DNA of 64,000 nt from the IMG/VR virus record IMGVR_UViG_3300031963_000004, positions 124,001-188,000 of that record. The stretch is one strand, 5' to 3'. Position numbers and translations under genes: made by a program. Under the pieces are notes generated by a model. It was not told the DNA's origin, ran no database searches, and saw only the letters and a program-made list of their open reading frames with translations. Positions 4,326 through 53,335 of this stretch are shown piece after piece (position 1 is the first letter of the stretch; every line of letters begins with the position of its first letter).

Positions 4326-6215
4326 TTAAGTGATGATTGTATCTGTGTTGGTATTTGGGAACGCTCTGTTGATGCCAGAACTACCTGACCAGATGAGTCT
4401 AACAGCTCCATGTCCACCATTACATCCTGGAGTTGTCTTAGCATCATTACTTTGTCCACCGCCACCTCCGCCTGGGAAGCCGCCTGTGTTACTTGCACCA
4501 CCTACTGTGAACAATGGGGAACCGTTGCTGCCATTACTTCCACCTTGACCTGATAAACTTCCTGAATTACCTGAACCTAATAATCCTGTACCGCCACCTG
4601 ATCCTGAAGATCCAGCTGATCCATTTGATCTATCGTGCGCACCACCTGCTGATCCGCCACCTAAACCGCCTGTAAATGATCCACTGTTTTGACTTCCGCC
4701 GCGGCCACCGGTGCCAGAATATCCACCTGCACCACCACCGCCACCAGGATAATCGCTATTACTTGAGCCACCATCACCACCGCGGCCACCGCCGTCACCT
4801 GCAAATGAACCACCAATCCCGCCTGCGTAACTTGTATTTGTGTTACTTGCTGTGCCTATACCCGCGGTTCCACCGAAGCCTGCAACAGTGCTTGAGTTAA
4901 TAAAATAACTGTCACCACCATTAGTACCTTGTCCACCTGCTGCTGCACTAACACCAACACCACCTGCACCAACTACAACAGTGTAGTTATTTCCTGGTAC
5001 TATAGGTATATTATTCTTCCAGCCGAGACCGCCACCGCCGCCACCGCCACCTGCCCAATAAGCTGCGCCGCCAGCGCCACCGCCGCCAACTGCGACAGCA
5101 TGTACACTTGTAACACCAATTGGTGCTCTCCATGTATAGACACCCGGATTAGTAAATAATGCTTCACCTGCACCGCCTGGCAATGTTGTTACTGTGCTTC
5201 CAGTAGTGTATCCTTGATAGTTAGGACTGTTAACTGCCAATACGTTACCTATAATTAATGGATTGCCCCATGTATTTGCGATATACGCGGTACTTGGTGG
5301 CCTTAATGATACTGTCACTGCGCTACCGCTACTTACCATTGATCTGCCGTAACTCAAATAATGTCCATCAGGTACTTGATCAAATTTCGTAACAATGGTG
5401 ATTACATTACCTACGTCACCATTACTACCTCTTGTGCCATTTGTTTTTACGTTTACGCTTATAAAACTCTGTAGATATTTGTAATTACCTTGCGCTGCCT
5501 TTTGCTTAAACACTTCACGATATGTTGTATTAAGATTATAATACCCCATTGATGCAGTTAGTGTAGTAGGTGCGCCAGAGCCGCCTATTCTCGTTACGCC
5601 TGAATAGTCTACACCTGCTATTTTTGTAGTACCGCTAACTGGACTACTGATTACTACAGTTCCACAATCTCTGGTTAAGTTATTCCATAATGTATTGATA
5701 CCAGTACCACTCGGGTGTGTGAAGTTGATAGCGATTTGTCCGCCTGCATTAAAGAAATGTCTTGCAGCGTCTCCGGAATCGAAGGTGATTGTATGACTAA
5801 AGAATACGTGATTATTCCATTGTTCTTGTTTTACTACGGTAGCTGAGATTGTTGCTCCCTGAGCAGCGCAATTATTTCTATTATTATAGATTGAGGTTAA
5901 TGCAGTTTCAAACGCTGAAGTAACGCTATCGTTATCTTCCGCTTCAATAATTTCAGATTCATTTATAGAGATAGTAGGAACAATAGTATTTTGATGCCTA
6001 GAAACACTATTAATGCCAGATATCAAATTATTCCAATTACCCCAAGATACAACTGCGTCTGTAGCTACTAGTGGAAGGGGTATCTGACCATATCCTGATC
6101 TTCCACTTCCCATACCATATACGGTATTGAATCTATTCGGGGCTGCACTGGGATCAGTGCCTACGTAATTATTATAGTCACTTGCTTGTATTAATCCGCC
6201 CGCAATGTAAGCCAT
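4326..6215 (-). CDS. Tail fibre / virion protein with C-terminal glycine-rich domain
   Basis: N-terminal MAY..G.LI.A.DYN and ARHFFNAGG motifs; C-terminal Gly-rich domain (VGGGGAGG...GGHGAVRLIW). Confidence 0.7.
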   Translation of the reverse strand: MAYIAGGLIQASDYNNYVGTDPSAAPNRFNTVYGMGSGRSGYGQIPLPLVATDAVVSWGNWNNLISGINSVSRHQNTIVPTISINESEIIEAEDNDSVTSAFETALTSIYNNRNNCAAQGATISATVVKQEQWNNHVFFSHTITFDSGDAARHFFNAGGQIAINFTHPSGTGINTLWNNLTRDCGTVVISSPVSGTTKIAGVDYSGVTRIGGSGAPTTLTASMGYYNLNTTYREVFKQKAAQGNYKYLQSFISVNVKTNGTRGSNGDVGNVITIVTKFDQVPDGHYLSYGRSMVSSGSAVTVSLRPPSTAYIANTWGNPLIIGNVLAVNSPNYQGYTTGSTVTTLPGGAGEALFTNPGVYTWRAPIGVTSVHAVAVGGGGAGGAAYWAGGGGGGGGLGWKNNIPIVPGNNYTVVVGAGGVGVSAAAGGQGTNGGDSYFINSSTVAGFGGTAGIGTASNTNTSYAGGIGGSFAGDGGGRGGDGGSSNSDYPGGGGGAGGYSGTGGRGGSQNSGSFTGGLGGGSAGGAHDRSNGSAGSSGSGGGTGLLGSGNSGSLSGQGGSNGSNGSPLFTVGGASNTGGFPGGGGGGQSNDAKTTPGCNGGHGAVRLIWSGSSGINRAFPNTNTDTIIT

Positions 6216-38814: not shown

Positions 38815-39462
38815 ATGTTTATCAAAAACGAATCATATATTAGATACTATGAAATAATTGAAAATGCAAATAAAATTTGCCCAAGAACTATAAAAAAGAC
38901 TGAAGCAATGGAAATTAGAGGGTACATTGAAGATCATCACATCATACCTAAATGTTTAGGTGGAAAAGATGTTCTTTCTAACAAAGTATGGTTAACCGCA
39001 GAAGAACATTTCATATGTCATAAACTACTCACAGAAATGACGGTTGACACTGCTAATGGTAAAATGTGGAGTGCATTGTGGCGAATGATGAATAAACAAA
39101 GCAAAAATCAATCACGTGATTATCAAATAGATGCAAAAGAATATGCAATAGCTAGAGAACAAAATGCAAAAAATCATAGCATTAGGATGCAAGGTAGTTT
39201 GAACCCGTTTCATAATAAAAAACATTCTGATTCTACTAAAGAAGTTATGTCTGCTAAGAAAAAAGGTAAATCATACGAAGAAATTTTTGGTGCGACTAAG
39301 GCAAAAGAAATGCGACTCCGCAGAAGTAAAGAATCATTAGGAAAATTAAAAGGTCCTCAACAAAAAATTAAATGTTTGCATTGCGGGTCTGAAGGTGGGT
39401 TAGGGATTATGAAACGGTGGCACGGTGATAGATGTAAAAATTTAAATAACATACTAAAATGA
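38815..39462 (+). mobile_element. Free-standing HNH homing endonuclease with NUMOD3-like DNA-binding motif
   Basis: EDHHIIPKCLGG...N.V.LTAEEHFICHKLL; NPFHNKKHS..TK..MS; C-terminal C..C...RWH...C. Confidence 0.85.
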
Positions 39463-39964: not shown

Positions 39965-40525
39965 ATGCCATCACCACAGAAAGCTAAAGGATCAGGATTT
40001 GAGCGAGAAATTGCTAAGTATCTCAGTGAAACATACGGAGAGAGCTTTATTCGTGCGCCCGGATCCGGTGCTTATATAGGTGGCAAAAATCAGAATCGCA
40101 CTCAGATATTACATGAGGGCCAGATTCGCAGTTTCAAAGGGGATATTGTTCCCGGAGAAAGTTTTCCAAAATTCAATGCAGAATGTAAGTTCTATAGTGA
40201 CTTTGCATTTCATTTGTTGCTAACAGGTGAACATAAGGTTTTAGATGGTTGGATACAACAATTACTTGATGTAGCTGACCCGGGTGATTGCAACATACTT
40301 TTTATGAAGTTTAATAGAATAGGAAGATATGTAGCAGTGCAATGTCACTTAACATGGATCATTGATAATTTTACTTTTTATGCAAGTAAAAAAGTTGGTG
40401 ATTGGTATATAATAGAATTTGATCATTTTATGGCTCACAATAAAAATTTACTCAAGGCATATTCAGGCAACACAGGCACATCAGACACCAAGTCAAGCAC
40501 TTCATTACTTACAATAGACATTTAA
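39965..40525 (+). CDS. Putative Holliday junction resolvase (PD-(D/E)xK, Hjc-like)
   Basis: KAKGSGFEREIA..L...F.R.PGSGA...GDI...AECK. Confidence 0.75.
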   Translation: MPSPQKAKGSGFEREIAKYLSETYGESFIRAPGSGAYIGGKNQNRTQILHEGQIRSFKGDIVPGESFPKFNAECKFYSDFAFHLLLTGEHKVLDGWIQQLLDVADPGDCNILFMKFNRIGRYVAVQCHLTWIIDNFTFYASKKVGDWYIIEFDHFMAHNKNLLKAYSGNTGTSDTKSSTSLLTIDI

Positions 40526-40983
40526 TACAATTCGACGGTCAAGTTGTTGACCCTCCTTGAGGACGTACAGGTAGTGCTGTGCTGACGGATCTGGAGTACG
40601 CCTAAGATTAATCTTAGGGAACACCGACAGGGCAATCGTGTGGAGCGAACCCTGAATGAGTACATAGTTAACTTTGTCTTGCGACTATGTAACATGCGTT
40701 GCTGAGGCGTTATTTATAAGAAATAATAGTCTCACTACAGTCCCAATAAACTTTACAGAGCAACCGGTGGCGATTGACAGCGAAAAGGGCTAGTTAGTCG
40801 GGGAATAGACAACATGGGTGACGGTCATGGCAAGTAACCTTTACCAATGGTAGTGCTGAATAGCACTACCATGGATTCAAATCGGCAATTAGTTAATATA
40901 ATCCTATAATAAGAATAAGTCCGAACAAACGAATGAGCGATAGCGAATGAGTGTGAAGGACTTAGATTAGCGAAGCTAATCTC
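40526..40983 (+). ncRNA. Unclassified ~460-nt highly structured non-coding element (putative RNA)
   Basis: No ORF of 60 aa or more; GC-richer than the flanks; at least 10 helices, including nested CACCG/CGGTG and GTTGCT/AGCAAC pairings; G-U wobbles work only on the + strand. Confidence 0.65.
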
Positions 40984-41160
40984 TTAAAAGAATGGCATCT
41001 GAGATTTTTTTGTGGTTTCTAGGTTTTCTTCAATAATTTCGTTTAATGATTGGAGTTCTTCCGGGCTCATGTTTAATACATCTTCATAGGATACAGCTCC
41101 GCGCATATACCAGGCTATACGTTGTGCATTTTTCTTAATAGCCTTAACGTCTTTCTCCAT
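40984..41160 (-). CDS. gp51-like baseplate/tail assembly chaperone (58 aa from ATG; probably expressed as a -1 frameshift extension of the upstream gene)
   Basis: MEKDVKAIKKNAQRIAWYMRGAVSYEDVLNMSPEELQSLNEIIEENLETTKKSQMPFF; the frame stays open back to the slippery site at 41214-41220. Confidence 0.75.
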   Translation of the reverse strand: MEKDVKAIKKNAQRIAWYMRGAVSYEDVLNMSPEELQSLNEIIEENLETTKKSQMPFF

Positions 41161-41169
41161 GCCTTCTAT

Positions 41170-41220
41170 AAGCTTCCCGATACCCTCGGAGTCGAGGTAT
41201 AGAAGCTTTATTCGAAAAAA
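41170..41220 (-). promoter_or_regulatory. -1 programmed ribosomal frameshift signal (U UUU UUC, 5-nt spacer, stem-loop)
   Basis: mRNA reads GAU UUU UUC GAA UA AAGCUUC U AUACCUCG ACUC CGAGG G UAU CGG GAAGCUU. Confidence 0.75.
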
Positions 41221-42041
41221 TCGCTGATGTTCAACGTGAATGGTTGATCATATTCATGCTTACAATGTGTACATGCAATATGTAATGGTTTAATTTGTGT
41301 GGTTTCTCTTAATTTAATGCTGGTTTCACGAATCATTTCAAAGGTTTTCTTATCGGTATTATTGAGAAAATCTTTAATATAAGCCTTTTCAGATACTACT
41401 GCTTCAGGTGTAGCTATGTATTCTATAACATTAACTAATACATCAATTGTGCTGTCCCCGATTATTTTGAGAATTTCGGTACTTCTAGCCTCACGTTCTG
41501 GGCCTTCTTCCATAGAGTTTAGAGTGATAAATGCTCTTTGAATTTCTAATTGCCTTGCAGTGCTATTAGTAAGTTCTTTGTACATTAATGGTCTAAATTT
41601 AATACGTAAATTATCAATCATTAATGGTCTATCATAATCACCCGGGGCGAAGTTATTAAGTACAAAACTTAAATTTAATCCAAACTTACTATCTTCATTA
41701 CAATTTGGACATGTAGTATCTAAATCCATATCATTACCATTAGTCGCTATTTTAATAGCAACTAATATAGCATCCAAATCAACACTGCTTATAGCCCATG
41801 GGTCTTTAATACTAGGTACACAACTGCGTATTATCTCAGCCACCGCTGATCCATTGTATAATGCATCAGGTGTTTTACTGGTTATCTCATCAATAGCAGT
41901 CATAGGATAAACTGGTAGTTCACCAGTTTCTGTCATAACCAAAACATCAGGACCATATCCTTTCCCTTGAGTTGGTAATTTTAAATAGATTCCTGGTCTG
42001 CGAAAGTATTGCTTAAGTGGGTTATGTTCGATACTGCTCAT
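41208..42041 (-). CDS. Baseplate hub/tail assembly chaperone, T4 gp26-like
   Basis: NPLKQYFRRP.IY.KLP..G, PMTA.DE..KTPDAL.NG, D.DAIL.AI.IAT.G, two CxxC motifs (CPNC, CTHC) and C-terminal DFF. Confidence 0.75.
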   Translation of the reverse strand: MSSIEHNPLKQYFRRPGIYLKLPTQGKGYGPDVLVMTETGELPVYPMTAIDEITSKTPDALYNGSAVAEIIRSCVPSIKDPWAISSVDLDAILVAIKIATNGNDMDLDTTCPNCNEDSKFGLNLSFVLNNFAPGDYDRPLMIDNLRIKFRPLMYKELTNSTARQLEIQRAFITLNSMEEGPEREARSTEILKIIGDSTIDVLVNVIEYIATPEAVVSEKAYIKDFLNNTDKKTFEMIRETSIKLRETTQIKPLHIACTHCKHEYDQPFTLNISDFFE

Positions 42042-44542: not shown

Positions 44543-47305
44543 ATGGCAACTCCAGAAGAAATTAACAGAGAATTATCTAACCTAGCTAGATCGTTAGGTT
44601 CTGCCAGCGCAGATATTGCATCTGCTTCTAAAACTGCTGCAACAGGAGCAAATGCAGTAAAACTATCTTTACAAACATTTGCCACTACTCTTAAATCAAC
44701 TGCTTCTAGTATAAGTGATATAAACAGCGATTTTCAAAAATTTGATGGTGCAATTACTGCCACCTCAAATTCCATACAAAGATTTAGCGTATTTTTTGGA
44801 AAATATGGAATAGCATTTAAGGGAGTAATAAAAGGCTTTGAAGCAAGCTTAAAGTCAGTGACTCAGTTTGGTGAAAGCTTAACTCAATTTTATGATAGTG
44901 TATCGGCATTAGGAGTAACAGCAAGTAGAACTACAGATCAAATTCTTGATTTAATGCACCAAGCAGGATATACACTTGCTAATTCAAAAGAGTTTTATAA
45001 GCTAGTCAAAGATTCGGGAACAACTCTTACCTCATTAGGAGAAACATCGGCTAAAGGTTTAGATAGATTAGCAAGTGTTTTTAACGTTACCCAACTAGAA
45101 GGGGCGCAGGAAAGCTTTTTAAAGTTGGGTTTGGGTCCAAAAGAACTAAACAAACTTCAATTAGAATATATTAAAAGTCAAGCTACAGTAGGATTAAAAC
45201 TTACATCAAATGATAATCTATTGCGTGAAAGCTCATTAGAGTACGCAAAATCTTTAACTAAGTTAAGTGCATTAACAGGTGAATCAAGAGATAAAGTTGC
45301 TCAAGAAATTGCTAAGAATCGCAAAGATATTAGGTACGCATTAAAAATTCAAGAACTTACAGCCAAAGGTAATCAAAAAGCTATTGATGCATTTGATAAG
45401 GCAGGAGCCATTGTTGGATTAAATTTAGGTGATGATTATAGTTCGGGATTAAGAGATTTCGTAGCTAATGGTACAGCTACTACCAAAGAAGGTGAAATGC
45501 TATTGTATAAAACTCAAGGACAAATTGCAAAATGGGTTCGTGATGTTGAAGCAGGAACAATGGATGAGGTTGAACTCGCAAGAAAAATAGCAAAAGCAGA
45601 ACAACAATTTACGCAGGGCAATAGAGAAGCTTTAACCTTCAGTGATGAATTTAGAGAAAGAATGTCATCATCAGGTGATACTATCGCAGGCGCAACTAGA
45701 TTATTAGAAATTAGAAGTAAAGAAGATGTTGATAAAATGGTAGAGGCTGCTGCTAAACGGGAGGATGCTAGAAAATCAAATCAAAGTGAAACAATAAATT
45801 TAGAGAGAAAAGCCAGTCATTTAAATGATAAACTAAGTCAAATGTTGTTTGGAACCGGCGTAGATGTTATACTTGGATTAATAGAAATTGTAAAGCAGAC
45901 AGCAAGAGGTACTATTAAATTAGCACTTATGTTACCAATTGACGGGAAATTAGAAGAATCATTAAAAGAATTAGAAACTATTTTAAGTAGTAAGGATGGA
46001 TTAGGAGAAACTAAAAAAGAACTAGATGGAAAAATTGATGAGATATCCAAACAAATAAAAGATAGAGAAAATATAGCTAAATCAATTAAACTCTCTGAAT
46101 CGGAATTAAAAGAAGCACAAGAAAGAAAAACAAAATTAGATGCAGACGTTCAAAAAGATCCAACAAGCGACCTAGCTAAAGAAACACAAAGAAATAACGA
46201 AATATTGATTGAGCGTAAACAAAGAGAAATTGAAATATTAAAACGTAAAGAAAAAGAATTAGAAGAAAAAAGAACCAAACAAGAACTTGAAAGAGATAGA
46301 AAAAAACTACTTGATCAAAGTCGTAGGGTAGAAAAAGAACGCAAGCAAACAACTAAAGCGGATCAAACAGTTCCGCCCGTAAGAACAGACAAAAAAGATG
46401 ATGGGAAAAGAAGACCATATAAGCCGCCTAAGATGGAGAGCGGTGAAGATGATGATAGAACAATATACCCTGAGCTAGCACCTGTCAAAGGAAAGTTTAG
46501 TAACATAGATTATGTAGATGCTAGATTCCAAAAACAATTTCAAGGATTGATTGATGAAATGGAAGAAAGGGGCTATAAGGTAAAAACACTAAGCGGTTAT
46601 AGAAAACATAATACGGTTCGTGGAGGTCCTTATAGCGCACATGCCTTTGGTATAGCCATTGATGTTAATGCTAAAGAAAACTGGGGTAACATGGATACTG
46701 GAGGTGAAGGACCAGTTAAAACTGACATGCCAGCATATTTTTCTCAATTAGCGAAAAAATATGGCTTAGGATGGGGTAAGGATTGGGGAGGTAAGTGGAA
46801 GGATCCTATGCATTTTAGCGGCATGCCTAAAGAGGGTGGTAGTTTAGTTAAGGGAACAAAACACATTTATCCTCAGTTTAAAAGAGGTGGCGTAGGTCAA
46901 GGTCCAGAATCTGGTTATGATGTTACACTACATGGTAGAGAGGCAATCGTCCCATTCAATGGAAAACCAATTCAAGTAAAGATTAATGACAAAAATCTTA
47001 AGATTGACCATAAGAAAAAGTTTAATGAATTAGCTGAAAGAGCTAATGAAATGCGTCAAAAACTACAAGAAAAGACCAACAAAGTTGATCTAAAAGCTAA
47101 AGATACTACAGTAGATTTTACTGAGATAACCAATAATATTAAGGCAAAAATAGTAAACTTAAATCAATTTTACCAAGAAAATCAAGAGGATACAGTAGAT
47201 ACATCATTAGCAGATGCGTTAGTTAATAAGCTTGAAAATATGATTTCTAGTGTGGATCGCAGCAATTCCATACACAACGATCTAAAAATGTATCTACGCA
47301 ATTAA
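44543..47305 (+). CDS. Tape-measure-like protein 2 with M15 peptidoglycan peptidase domain
   Basis: Helical N-terminal part; SGYR...SAHAFGIAID...WGKDW...DPMHF (M15 Zn-peptidase); GG...GP.SGY...LHG.EA.VP motif. Confidence 0.7.
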   Translation: MATPEEINRELSNLARSLGSASADIASASKTAATGANAVKLSLQTFATTLKSTASSISDINSDFQKFDGAITATSNSIQRFSVFFGKYGIAFKGVIKGFEASLKSVTQFGESLTQFYDSVSALGVTASRTTDQILDLMHQAGYTLANSKEFYKLVKDSGTTLTSLGETSAKGLDRLASVFNVTQLEGAQESFLKLGLGPKELNKLQLEYIKSQATVGLKLTSNDNLLRESSLEYAKSLTKLSALTGESRDKVAQEIAKNRKDIRYALKIQELTAKGNQKAIDAFDKAGAIVGLNLGDDYSSGLRDFVANGTATTKEGEMLLYKTQGQIAKWVRDVEAGTMDEVELARKIAKAEQQFTQGNREALTFSDEFRERMSSSGDTIAGATRLLEIRSKEDVDKMVEAAAKREDARKSNQSETINLERKASHLNDKLSQMLFGTGVDVILGLIEIVKQTARGTIKLALMLPIDGKLEESLKELETILSSKDGLGETKKELDGKIDEISKQIKDRENIAKSIKLSESELKEAQERKTKLDADVQKDPTSDLAKETQRNNEILIERKQREIEILKRKEKELEEKRTKQELERDRKKLLDQSRRVEKERKQTTKADQTVPPVRTDKKDDGKRRPYKPPKMESGEDDDRTIYPELAPVKGKFSNIDYVDARFQKQFQGLIDEMEERGYKVKTLSGYRKHNTVRGGPYSAHAFGIAIDVNAKENWGNMDTGGEGPVKTDMPAYFSQLAKKYGLGWGKDWGGKWKDPMHFSGMPKEGGSLVKGTKHIYPQFKRGGVGQGPESGYDVTLHGREAIVPFNGKPIQVKINDKNLKIDHKKKFNELAERANEMRQKLQEKTNKVDLKAKDTTVDFTEITNNIKAKIVNLNQFYQENQEDTVDTSLADALVNKLENMISSVDRSNSIHNDLKMYLRN

Positions 47306-53311: not shown

Positions 53312-53335
53312 AAGCGCACTTCGGTGCGCTTTTTT
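53312..53335 (+). terminator. Rho-independent terminator after the major capsid gene
   Basis: AAGCGCAC-TTCG-GTGCGCTT followed by a T run (cUUCGg tetraloop). Confidence 0.9.

What the first reader, a model, noticed from the sequence alone, without database searches (positions are those of the whole stretch)
40900..40983. G.A-rich hairpin and GCGAAGC mini-hairpin resembling ssDNA priming signals: candidate replication origin
Seen: after a short AT-rich stretch (~40888-40915), a TAAGTCC/GGACTTA stem encloses the purine-rich repeat CGAATGAG-CGATAG-CGAATGAG. It is followed at once by AGATTAGC-GAA-GCTAATCT. Established: d(GCGAAGC) is an unusually stable DNA mini-hairpin closed by a sheared G.A pair, and ColE1-type primosome assembly sites are GA-rich hairpins of similar appearance (CGAACGACCGAGCGCAGCGAG...). 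Inference: structured RNA, AT-rich stretch and ssDNA hairpin together resemble a ColE1 RNA II/pas-type, R-loop-primed origin. The element lies near where overall gene orientation switches and beside the recombination genes. A simpler alternative for the last hairpin is a terminator between convergent operons.
Basis: partly seen in the sequence, partly recalled or inferred. Interest (0 to 1): 0.65.

Follow-up and report, generated by a model that had tools for sequence, protein, structure and literature searches.

The report
Conserved double hairpin of jumbo phages
Two small hairpins with G.A mismatches and G-N-A loops, just downstream of an undescribed structured RNA gene, are conserved from lake viruses to E. 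coli, Salmonella and Agrobacterium jumbo phages; they are not ordinary terminators and may be a single-stranded-DNA signal for starting replication, which is not yet shown.

Summary
Window 40916-40982 holds two abutting hairpins. hp1 has an outer stem, then 2-bp steps alternating with tandem G.A pairs, then a GAUA loop. hp2 is an 8-bp stem with a C(GAA)G apex.

In 71 distinct relatives, 98.9% of stem cells pair and 14 of 15 pairs show compensatory change. 66 of 71 hp2 loops are G..A, and the closing C-G pair never varies.

Upstream on the same strand lies a ~350-nt structured RNA (40538-40889; 38 of 69 pairs compensatory; no Rfam match), then a variable AT-rich spacer.

The module recurs in Salmonella phage 7t3 and Atu_ph07 (model matches), and more weakly or only by eye in XbC2, CBB, GAP32, UE-S1 and Phosso. 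In most enteric copies it lies beyond the upstream block's own terminator. At the hub locus it lies between two convergent terminators.

It has no U-tract and almost no wobble pairs, and its loops follow the DNA mini-hairpin rule rather than GNRA. A plain terminator is therefore unlikely.

An origin or priming role is coherent but untested, and GC skew gives no support. An RNA-level role is nearly as likely.

Verdict: a new conserved element, function open.

The parts
39965..40525 (+). PDDEXK_15 / 'endonuclease VII'-type nuclease gene, the upstream neighbour. Context only; not shown to act on the element.
   Evidence: Pfam PF24608 at E 1.6e-23. Its homologue sits beside the same noncoding gap in Phosso (38% identity), UE-S1, GAP32 and 7t3.
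40538..40889 (+). Conserved structured noncoding RNA core, 11 helices. The invariant single-stranded CCUCCUUGAG is at 40552-40561. The last hairpin is 40844-40874. The conserved tail AAUCGGCAAU is at 40880-40889.
   Evidence: Alignment A1: 69 pairs, 98.5% paired, 38 compensatory, 0/500 shuffles, slid controls 27-43%. There are 197 G.U against 13 A.C cells, so the + strand is the one that folds. Indels are mostly not multiples of 3, and the window's ORF is not conserved. No Rfam hit. GC is 0.44 against 0.36 for the window as a whole.
40890..40915 (.). AT-rich variable spacer (15% GC here).
   Evidence: In relatives it is 22-58 nt, GC 0.25, with mean identity 0.48 against 0.74-0.77 for the flanks. 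A sigma70-like TCGGCA-17-TATAAT lies at 40882-40910 but is no more than chance would give.
40916..40964 (+). Hairpin 1: a 7-bp outer stem, then 2-bp steps alternating with tandem G.A/A.G mismatches, then a C-closed GAUA loop (40939-40942).
   Evidence: Across relatives, tandem GA is kept on the 5' side in 64/71 and on the 3' side in 57-64/71. Apical loops are GAA in 31 and GATA in 12, with the remaining short loops nearly all G..A. Outer and inner stems covary.
40964..40982 (+). Hairpin 2: 8 bp with a C(GAA)G apex. It contains GCGAAGC at 40970-40976.
   Evidence: 7 modelled pairs, 100% paired, 6 with compensatory change, closing C-G 70/70. Loops are GAA 46, GTA 8, GTTA 4, GCA 2, GTAA 2 and others; 3 are TGC. 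There are no G.U among the hp2 stem cells of A3 (about 490) and 1 in 413 in A1.
40984..41160 (-). Conserved 58-aa ORF. Its stop codon abuts hp2. It is the convergent neighbour, followed by the baseplate-hub gene at 41208-42041 (-).
   Evidence: tblastn shows the order nuclease gene, noncoding gap, small ORF (-), hub (-) kept in nearly all of ~200 loci. T4_baseplate Pfam match.

Best explanation
The two hairpins are a separate, strand-specific, structure-selected module. They are neither a terminator nor a chance palindrome. The module is coupled to an upstream noncoding RNA gene.

My preferred reading is that the module works as folded single-stranded DNA on the non-template (+) strand of a transcription-activated replication or priming site.
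- Transcription of the structured RNA runs into the AT-rich spacer and opens it. This step is inferred.
- An RNA 3' end, or the open complex, lets DNA synthesis start rightwards. This step is inferred.
- The displaced + strand snaps into two very stable C-GNA-G / tandem-G.A hairpins. These would resist SSB and offer a landmark for primase or helicase loading. This step is inferred by analogy with the phage G4, St-1 and alpha3 origins and with RSF1010 ssiA.

What is shown: the structure, its strand specificity, its deep conservation, its position after the RNA and the spacer, and its lack of terminator features.

What is not shown: any replication activity, or that the module acts as DNA rather than RNA.
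For: (1) The loops obey the DNA mini-hairpin rule, C-GNA-G or C-GNNA-G with any N, rather than the RNA GNRA rule. 57/71 hp2 loops are triloops. Among the tetraloops, GTTA and GCTA occur as often as true GNRA. The closing C-G is invariant. The review PMC13037366 reports that the RNA versions are much less stable. It also reports that GCGAAAGC and GCGTTAGC interchange at the G4, St-1 and alpha3 primase origins, that RSF1010 ssiA carries CCGAAGG, and that N4 promoters carry GGA or GAA loops.
(2) hp2 stems are almost purely Watson-Crick: 0 G.U in A3 and 1/413 in A1. The adjacent RNA core has 4.9% wobble cells.
(3) There is no U-tract after hp2: 3.45 T per 10 nt against a background of 3.3. Real terminators in this genome are GC-rich stems with A and T runs or C(UUCG)G loops.
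(4) In most enteric relatives the module lies after the upstream block's own covarying intrinsic terminator. At the hub locus it lies between two convergent terminators.
(5) It is single-copy in complete 352- and 364-kb relatives. Salmonella phage 7t3 has three copies at E about 1e-3 and two weaker ones, all on one strand, 54-82 kb apart.
(6) An AT-rich variable spacer always precedes it.
(7) It lies among recombination and replication genes: gp46/47 and the nuclease here, and the RNase HI gene next to the gap in Phosso.
Against: There is no direct evidence of initiation.
- The GC-skew minimum is 6-9 kb away here and about 44 kb away in the complete relative G002. In this genome skew follows gene strand, so it says little either way.
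- There are no iterons or repeated boxes.
- No promoter for the RNA could be defined in the lake clade.
- Pfam searches found no gp59, DnaG zinc-ribbon or RNase H in three genomes. These are weak negatives, and the gp59 control did not ring anywhere.
- Tandem G.A and G..A loops are also ordinary RNA motifs.
- The module always follows an RNA on the same strand, as a 3' RNA domain would.
- At paralogous enteric loci it ends about 10-30 nt before the next gene's start, as a 5' leader would.
- One 151-nt contig from an RNA library spans it, although DNA carry-over cannot be excluded.
- A highly structured, covarying 350-nt RNA is more than a mere primer needs.
Confidence: 0.36

Rival explanations
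1. RNA-level element. The module would be transcribed with, or just after, the structured RNA. It could act as a 3' terminal domain that caps or protects the RNA, as a protein-binding or docking domain, or at paralogous loci as a 5' leader, stabiliser or operator of the next gene.
For: It is on the same strand as the folded RNA core and immediately downstream of it in ~200 lake loci and in the enteric cassettes. Tandem sheared G.A and G..A loops are classic RNA motifs. In the window, nothing else could stop + strand transcription before it runs antisense into the hub operon. At three 7t3 loci, and in XbC2 and CBB, the module ends about 10-30 nt before a co-directional start codon. An RNA-library contig spans 40883-41033.
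Against: The loops are mostly triloops and include non-GNRA tetraloops. hp2 has almost no wobble pairs, unlike the neighbouring RNA. The 5-bp hp2 of 7t3 folds at only -2.7 kcal/mol as RNA. A canonical terminator precedes the module in most enteric copies. The hub-locus copy, the one shared by all clades, has no downstream co-directional gene. In UE-S1, three of the four copies of the RNA-like block lack the module. The linker is variable in both sequence and length.
Confidence: 0.32
2. Another DNA-level signal: a binding or cleavage site for a structure-specific protein. Candidates are the neighbouring PDDEXK / endonuclease VII-type nuclease, a clamp-loading or nicking site, or a hairpin promoter of the N4 kind.
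For: It lies in the same noncoding gap as the nuclease gene in the lake clade, Phosso, UE-S1, GAP32 and 7t3. A short stem with a 3-nt purine loop closed by C-G is the architecture of N4 virion-RNAP promoters.
Against: In Atu_ph07 the module is about 200 kb from the nuclease gene. 7t3 has copies at loci without that gene. The related phage PA5oct is reported to rely on host RNA polymerase (PMC7318152). The module is not near the ends of the relative that has terminal repeats.
Confidence: 0.12
3. Right end of a duplicating noncoding cassette. The hairpins would be strand-specific ssDNA recognition structures for a transposition- or homing-like process that copies the unit of RNA block, terminator and module.
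For: Each enteric genome has 4-6 places matching the ~470-nt block, with some copies 92-93% identical. The 7t3 module copies are all co-oriented.
Against: No transposase or HUH enzyme was looked for or seen. The lake clade has a single copy in conserved synteny. The hairpins do not resemble IS200/IS605 or REP ends as I recall them; this was not tested.
Confidence: 0.06
4. A plain bidirectional intrinsic terminator between convergent operons.
For: The window has a convergent gene arrangement. Watson-Crick-only stems would serve both strands. The sequence 5' of hp1 is A-rich, 5.3 per 10 nt against a background of 3.05. That gives a U-rich tail on the - strand.
Against: There is no U-tract on the + strand. 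On the - strand, hp1 becomes a weak stem with U/C mismatches. Loop and G.A conservation is strand-specific and far above what terminators need. Enteric relatives carry separate canonical terminators on both sides. Phosso and the paralogous loci are not convergent.
Confidence: 0.06

Closest known systems
ColE1-type origin (RNA II primer plus primosome assembly site)
   Same: The order of parts on one strand matches: a long structured RNA, then an AT-rich transition zone, then hairpins on the strand that primer extension would displace.
   Different: No antisense RNA I, RNase H site or PriA dependence could be tested. There is no sequence or Rfam similarity. This is a phage, not a plasmid. Most enteric relatives have a canonical terminator between the RNA block and the hairpins.
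G4-type single-strand initiation signals and DNA mini-hairpins (phage G4, St-1 and alpha3 complementary-strand origins; RSF1010 ssiA)
   Same: The apex is C-GNA-G or C-GNNA-G, and the same interchange of loops (GAA, GTA, GTTA, GCAA and others) occurs among relatives. The hairpins are strand-specific and clustered (PMC13037366).
   Different: Those systems act on ssDNA phage or plasmid strands with host DnaG or RepB'. Here the genome is a ~350-kb dsDNA phage. The repeated tandem G.A steps of hp1 are not described for them. Activity is untested.
T4 oriF/oriG R-loop origins (promoter plus downstream DNA-unwinding element; from general knowledge)
   Same: A transcript runs into an AT-rich unwinding zone. 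The site lies among recombination and baseplate genes of a T4-related myovirus.
   Different: As I recall, T4 origins have no long structured RNA and no GNA hairpins. No MotA-type or other promoter was identified in the window, and no gp59 homologue was found (weak negative).
Phage N4 virion-RNAP hairpin promoters
   Same: A short stem with a 3-nt purine loop (GAA or GGA) closed by C-G, which functions as an extruded DNA hairpin on one strand.
   Different: No N4-type RNA polymerase is known in this phage group, and PA5oct is reported to use the host enzyme. N4 promoters are single hairpins with flanking consensus sequence.
Intrinsic terminators and T4-type stable RNA hairpins, C(UUCG)G or GNRA
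   Same: Compact, very stable hairpins at the ends of transcription units.
   Different: The module has no U-tract. Its loops are mainly triloops. This genome uses UUCG and ordinary A-run/T-run terminators elsewhere.
HK022 put antiterminator RNA (two stem-loops about one nucleotide apart; from memory)
   Same: Two abutting stem-loops downstream of a promoter, acting in cis.
   Different: No similarity was tested. The universal hub-locus copy points into a convergent operon, where antitermination would make no sense.

Membership tests
ColE1 RNA II / pas origin | A long primer RNA that folds and runs into the origin | tested here: inconclusive
   A structured + strand RNA of ~350 nt with 38 compensatory pairs lies upstream. 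Its ends, and any R-loop, are unknown.
ColE1 RNA II / pas origin | RNase H processing, antisense RNA I control, and a PriA-recognised pas hairpin | not testable with these tools
   No assay is available. No RNase H Pfam hit in G000-G002. An RNase HI gene lies beside the gap in Phosso only.
Replication origin (generic) | Coincides with the cumulative GC-skew extremum or strand switch | tested here: not met
   The minimum is at genome 156-159 kb against the module at 164.9 kb. In complete G002 the module is at 293 kb and the minimum at ~337 kb. In this genome skew tracks gene strand, so the test is weak.
Replication origin (generic) | Iterons or initiator boxes | tested here: not met
   No tandem or clustered direct repeats in 40300-41300.
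Replication origin (generic) | An AT-rich unwinding element next to the signal | tested here: met
   The spacer has GC 0.15 here and 0.25 across relatives, is variable in sequence, and is always present.
DNA mini-hairpin (GCGNAGC / GCGNNAGC) | A G..A loop of 3-4 nt closed by C-G | tested here: met
   hp2: 66/71 loops are GNA or GNNA, with closing C-G 70/70. hp1 apex is mostly C-GAA-G or C-GATA-G.
DNA mini-hairpin (GCGNAGC / GCGNNAGC) | The exact heptamer or octamer, with a G-C second pair | tested here: inconclusive
   The window has GCGAAGC (40970-40976), but most relatives have ACGAAGT. The heptamer is not enriched in the genome.
DNA mini-hairpin (GCGNAGC / GCGNNAGC) | Acts as DNA, not RNA | not testable with these tools
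   Indirect evidence only: the loop spectrum, the lack of wobble pairs, and the position beyond terminators.
Intrinsic (rho-independent) terminator | A GC-rich stem followed at once by a U-tract | tested here: not met
   T count after hp2 is 3.45 per 10 nt against a background of 3.3, and the longest T run is 3 or fewer in 68/71. The terminator scan does not call it.
Any Rfam 15 family | A covariance-model match | tested here: not met
   No hit at gathering score in the window. No hit up to E 10 within the noncoding gap, only three chance-level hits in the flanking genes. None in the enteric, Atu_ph07 or Phosso loci at E 0.05.
N4-type hairpin promoter | A 5-7 bp stem with a 3-nt purine loop on one strand | tested here: met
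   hp2 has a 5-9 bp stem, with GAA, GTA or GCA loops.
N4-type hairpin promoter | A cognate virion RNA polymerase encoded by the phage | not tested
   Not searched. PA5oct is reported to rely on host RNAP.

The most novel reading that the evidence does not exclude
Rak2/PA5oct/Atu_ph07-like jumbo phages may share a previously unrecognised origin cassette. Its parts would be a promoter-driven, highly structured RNA; an RNA 3' end, set in most enteric copies by an intrinsic terminator, that supplies the primer or opens the duplex; an AT-rich unwinding zone; and two ultra-stable DNA mini-hairpins on the displaced strand that load the primase or helicase. The cassette would be present once in the lake clade and as several co-oriented, spaced copies in enteric phages. 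This would be a ColE1- or G4-like logic in giant dsDNA phages.
Probability: 0.3. Interest if true: 0.85.

Novelty: new variant of a known kind. Interest (0 to 1): 0.62.

Why it matters
Origins of replication are unmapped in this large group of jumbo phages, which includes candidates for phage therapy (PA5oct; 121Q/PBECO4-like).

A single short element that can be found by search and is conserved from uncultured lake viruses to culturable E. coli and Salmonella phages makes the question directly testable.

Whatever the module does, the work also uncovers two undescribed, strongly conserved noncoding families. One is a ~350-nt covarying RNA in more than 200 lake-phage contigs. The other is a ~470-nt block present in 4-6 places in each enteric genome, currently annotated as strings of tiny ORFs.

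If the module acts as DNA, it would be the first natural use of the GNA mini-hairpin plus tandem-G.A architecture in a large dsDNA phage.

Tried and rejected
- Rfam at gathering score and at permissive E-values on the window, and tRNA/tmRNA scans: nothing in the gap.
- Megablast and blastn of the window region against isolated phages: no match.
- nhmmer with the core profile against Atu_ph07, Phosso, PA5oct and UE-S1 loci: nothing significant. Homology between the lake RNA core and the enteric ~470-nt block is therefore not shown. I noted only a shared 3' layout by eye: a strong hairpin, then a CAAATC..CG.CA motif, then the AT spacer, then the module.
- EGFOA (RF02955): one sub-threshold hit in the Phosso gap (29 bits, E 0.005). 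It disappears in a larger search, so I treat it as unproven.
- RNA-library contigs: low, even coverage of genes and gap alike, with no ends or strands visible. Inconclusive.
- GC skew in G000 and in complete G002: not centred on the module.
- Iterons: none.
- Coding potential of the core: rejected.
- Pfam searches for gp59, the DnaG zinc-ribbon and RNase H in three genomes: no hits. The gp59 control rang nowhere, so these are weak negatives.
- The genome-contig hit in Chitinophaga: a chance match to the pattern only.
- A second model hit in the window at 47070-47122 (-): weak (E 0.005), inside a coding region, and judged chance.
- PA5oct's four published ncRNAs lie elsewhere. The CBB genome paper does not mention the element.
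- No covariance model of the whole core was attempted, because a ~350-position model exceeds the calibration limit stated for the tool.

Full report
**Setting.** The window is bases 124001-188000 of a 223-kb IMG/VR virus contig, about 63% complete. Its genes mark a T4-related jumbo myovirus. The + strand carries SbcD/SbcC (gp47/gp46) homologues, a free-standing homing endonuclease, a 5'-nucleotidase and a PDDEXK_15 nuclease. A 58-aa ORF and a T4-type baseplate-hub gene follow on the - strand. The nearest isolates by hub protein (29-35% identity) are Sinorhizobium phage Phosso, Agrobacterium phage Atu_ph07, Pseudomonas PA5oct and the Rak2/121Q/PBECO4/GAP32 group. The finding lies in the 458-nt gap (40526-40983) between the nuclease gene and the convergent small ORF.

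Read directly (coordinates checked), the spacer 40890-40915 is 15% GC. hp1 (40916-40964) has the outer stem TAAGTCC/GGACTTA. hp2 (40964-40982) is an 8-bp stem with a GAA loop closed by C-G. The purine-rich 'repeat' inside hp1 is one symmetric helix, AC-GA-AU-GA-GC-[GAUA]-GC-GA-AU-GA-GU. It consists of 2-bp steps alternating with tandem G.A/A.G mismatches in the Py-GA-Pu context. hp2 is the only perfect hairpin of 7 bp or more with a GAA triloop in the 223-kb genome. The bare heptamer GCGAAGC is not enriched.

**Conservation of the lake clade.** The nuclease protein retrieved 80 related viral contigs. A motif from the core retrieved 120 more. Nearly all keep the order nuclease gene, noncoding gap, small ORF (-), hub (-). 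A structure-blind alignment of 59 distinct gaps (A1) shows three zones:
- a core of median 354 nt (GC 0.44, mean identity 0.74);
- a spacer of 22-58 nt (GC 0.25, identity 0.48);
- the double-hairpin module of 46-59 nt (identity 0.77).

Both conserved zones look better conserved than the flanking hub protein, which is about 50% identical at the amino-acid level. This compares nucleotide identity with amino-acid identity, so it is only indicative.

**The hairpin module.** A covariance model built from 16 relatives, without the window, finds the window at E 2e-8 and finds most divergent loci. On 71 distinct sequences, 98.9% of cells pair, 14 of 15 pairs show changes on both sides, no shuffle of 500 reaches this, and slid controls give 31-52%. 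That alignment is fitted to the model, but the structure-blind A1 shows the same compensatory changes by eye.

The hp2 loops are GAA 46, GTA 8, GTTA 4, GCA 2, GTAA 2, and GCAA, GCTA, GATA, GTG and GTTAA once each. TGC occurs 3 times and one sequence has an insertion. So 66 of 71 are G..A loops, and the closing C-G is invariant in 70 of 70. In hp1 the tandem GA is kept on the 5' side in 64 of 71 and on the 3' side in 57-64 of 71. Its apical loops are mostly GAA or GATA.

**The upstream RNA.** RNAalifold on A1 gives 11 core helices. Counted on the structure-blind alignment, 69 pairs are 98.5% paired, 38 have compensatory changes, 0/500 shuffles reach this, and slid controls give 27-43%. G.U cells outnumber A.C cells 197 to 13, so the + strand is the folded one. 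Indels are mostly not multiples of three, and the window's 57-aa ORF on the - strand is open in only 19 of 59 relatives. There is no Rfam match at any threshold in the gap. The invariant core hairpin pattern found no true match in about 185,000 prokaryote genomes. This is an undescribed phage RNA family at window 40538-40889.

**Is the module a terminator?** Several results say no.
- The 10 nt after hp2 hold 3.45 T on average against a genomic 3.3. The longest T run is 3 or fewer in 68 of 71 sequences.
- The terminator scan does not call it.
- Real terminators in this genome are GC-rich stems flanked by A and T runs, or C(UUCG)G hairpins on the sense strand.
- On the - strand there is a mildly U-rich tail (5.3 A per 10 nt upstream of hp1), but there hp1 becomes a weak stem with U/C mismatches.

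The strongest argument comes from distant relatives.
- The enteric Rak2-like phages have a noncoding gap at the same place, between the 'endonuclease VII' (PDDEXK) gene and the small-ORF/hub operon.
- In it, on the strand convergent with the hub operon, lies an extended -10 promoter (TG-n-TATAAT) followed by a ~470-nt block. The block is conserved at about 70% identity across Escherichia, Salmonella, Erwinia, Pectobacterium, Cronobacter, Yersinia and Xanthomonas phages, with 4-6 places per genome.
- Most copies then carry a canonical intrinsic terminator whose stem covaries and whose T-run is kept. After it come a GC-rich hairpin, a short conserved motif, an AT-rich stretch, and only then an hp1-type hairpin and a short C(GAA)G or C(GUA)G hairpin. 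An example of the hp1 type is AUAAC-GA-AU-GAA-AU-GA-GUUAU in 7t3.
- A second model, built from the lake sequences, scores the 7t3 module at E 2e-5, hp1 of XbC2 at 4e-4 and the Atu_ph07 module at 2.7e-5. CBB, UE-S1 and GAP32 are weaker or seen only by eye. The Phosso module was not found by the model and rests on inspection.
- At the hub locus of 7t3, GAP32 and UE-S1, the hub operon has its own canonical terminator on the other strand. The module therefore sits between two convergent terminators.
- In Phosso the gap is divergent, between an RNase HI gene and the nuclease gene.
- At paralogous loci of 7t3, XbC2 and CBB, the module is followed within about 10-30 nt by a co-directional start codon.

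A function as 'terminator of convergent operons' cannot be the conserved one.

**RNA or DNA?** Three observations lean towards single-stranded DNA.
- The loop spectrum follows the DNA mini-hairpin rule, C-GNA-G or C-GNNA-G with any N. 57 of 71 loops are triloops, and GTTA and GCTA are as frequent as true GNRA. A recent review reports that the RNA counterparts are far less stable. It also reports that GCGAAAGC and GCGTTAGC replace each other at the primase origins of G4, St-1 and alpha3, that RSF1010 ssiA carries CCGAAGG, and that N4 promoters carry GGA or GAA mini-hairpins (PMC13037366).
- hp2 has essentially no wobble pairs (0 in A3, 1/413 in A1). The RNA core next to it has 4.9%. Relatedness among the sequences inflates any such contrast.
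- The module lies beyond a terminator in most enteric copies.

Against this, tandem G.A and G..A loops are also common RNA motifs. The module always follows an RNA on the same strand. In 7t3 it accompanies several copies of the block and abuts the next gene. One contig from an RNA library spans it, although DNA carry-over cannot be excluded. The nearest-neighbour folds do not discriminate.

**Is it an origin?** The geometry fits a transcription-activated origin. The RNA and the G..A loops are on the same strand, so the hairpins would form on the strand displaced by an R-loop or by primer extension, downstream of an AT-rich zone. Copy number fits as well. There is one copy in complete 352- and 364-kb lake genomes. 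In 7t3 there are three copies at E about 1e-3 plus two weaker ones, co-oriented and 54-82 kb apart. In UE-S1 only the hub-locus copy of four blocks has GA hairpins.

No direct evidence exists, however. The cumulative GC-skew minimum lies at the divergent gene switch 6-9 kb away in this contig, and in this genome skew follows gene strand locally. In the complete relative G002 the module (293 kb) is about 44 kb from the minimum at ~337 kb. There are no iterons. No promoter could be fixed for the lake RNA. Searches for gp59, the DnaG zinc-ribbon and RNase H were negative, and these are weak negatives. No paper that I could find describes the element.

**Verdict.** The plain-terminator reading is unlikely (about 0.06). 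I rank a single-stranded-DNA priming or origin signal first (about 0.36), an RNA-level role close behind (about 0.32), other DNA-level signals at about 0.12, and a mobile-cassette end at about 0.06. Membership in the ColE1 family is not supported. The resemblance is one of logic, not of homology.

Noticed in passing
window 40538-40889 (+): An undescribed ~350-nt structured RNA family: 38 compensatory pairs, in more than 200 lake-phage contigs, with no Rfam match. It has an invariant single-stranded CCUCCUUGAG (40552-40561), identical to the anti-Shine-Dalgarno core. This could pair with an invariant GGAG about 40 nt downstream or with mRNA SD sites.
   Followed up: partly
window 40570-40579, 40849-40858 and 40862-40870: GGTAGTGCTG occurs twice, and both copies are complementary to AGCACTACC. 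This allows an alternative long-range pairing that competes with the last core hairpin, so it is a possible conformational switch. The 5' copy is only partly conserved in relatives.
   Followed up: no
L212 4241-4790 (-), L242 701-1215, L245 701-1193; UE-S1 record at ~80.7, 174.5, 229.7 and 311.3 kb: Enteric Rak2-like jumbo phages carry 4-6 copies of a ~470-nt noncoding block with an extended -10 promoter and, in most copies, an intrinsic terminator. In several records the blocks are annotated as strings of 30-70-aa 'hypothetical proteins' (e.g. 7t3_0444-0448), which are probably spurious.
   Followed up: partly
most relatives, e.g. L015 ~1040-1081; absent from the window: A third conserved element lies between hp2 and the small ORF's stop. 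It is a short stem with the conserved loop AUAAAUGAAYAGUUA. On the - strand a U-rich run follows it, so it may be the hub operon's own terminator in those phages.
   Followed up: no
L203 6158-6287 (-), Sinorhizobium phage Phosso: A sub-threshold match to the Rfam EGFOA RNA (29 bits against a gathering score of 37.7) in the 1-kb unannotated gap next to an RNase HI gene. It is not significant in a larger search.
   Followed up: partly
L202 ~4573-4950 (Atu_ph07 record 470318-470695, +); L210 782-2807: Atu_ph07 has an unannotated open frame homologous to the PDDEXK nuclease, overlapped by small annotated ORFs. The module sits elsewhere, in a 2-kb gap with no annotated features.
   Followed up: no
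window 38815-39462 (+): A free-standing homing-endonuclease gene (phrog_655) inserted between the gp46 homologue and the 5'-nucleotidase gene.
   Followed up: no
window 53312-53331; genome 79470-79491 and 116102-116123: Three long perfect hairpins with C(UUCG)G tetraloops. The first reads UUCG on the + strand and the other two on the - strand. The first two lie in + and - gene blocks respectively, so they resemble the T4-type stable RNA hairpin.
   Followed up: no
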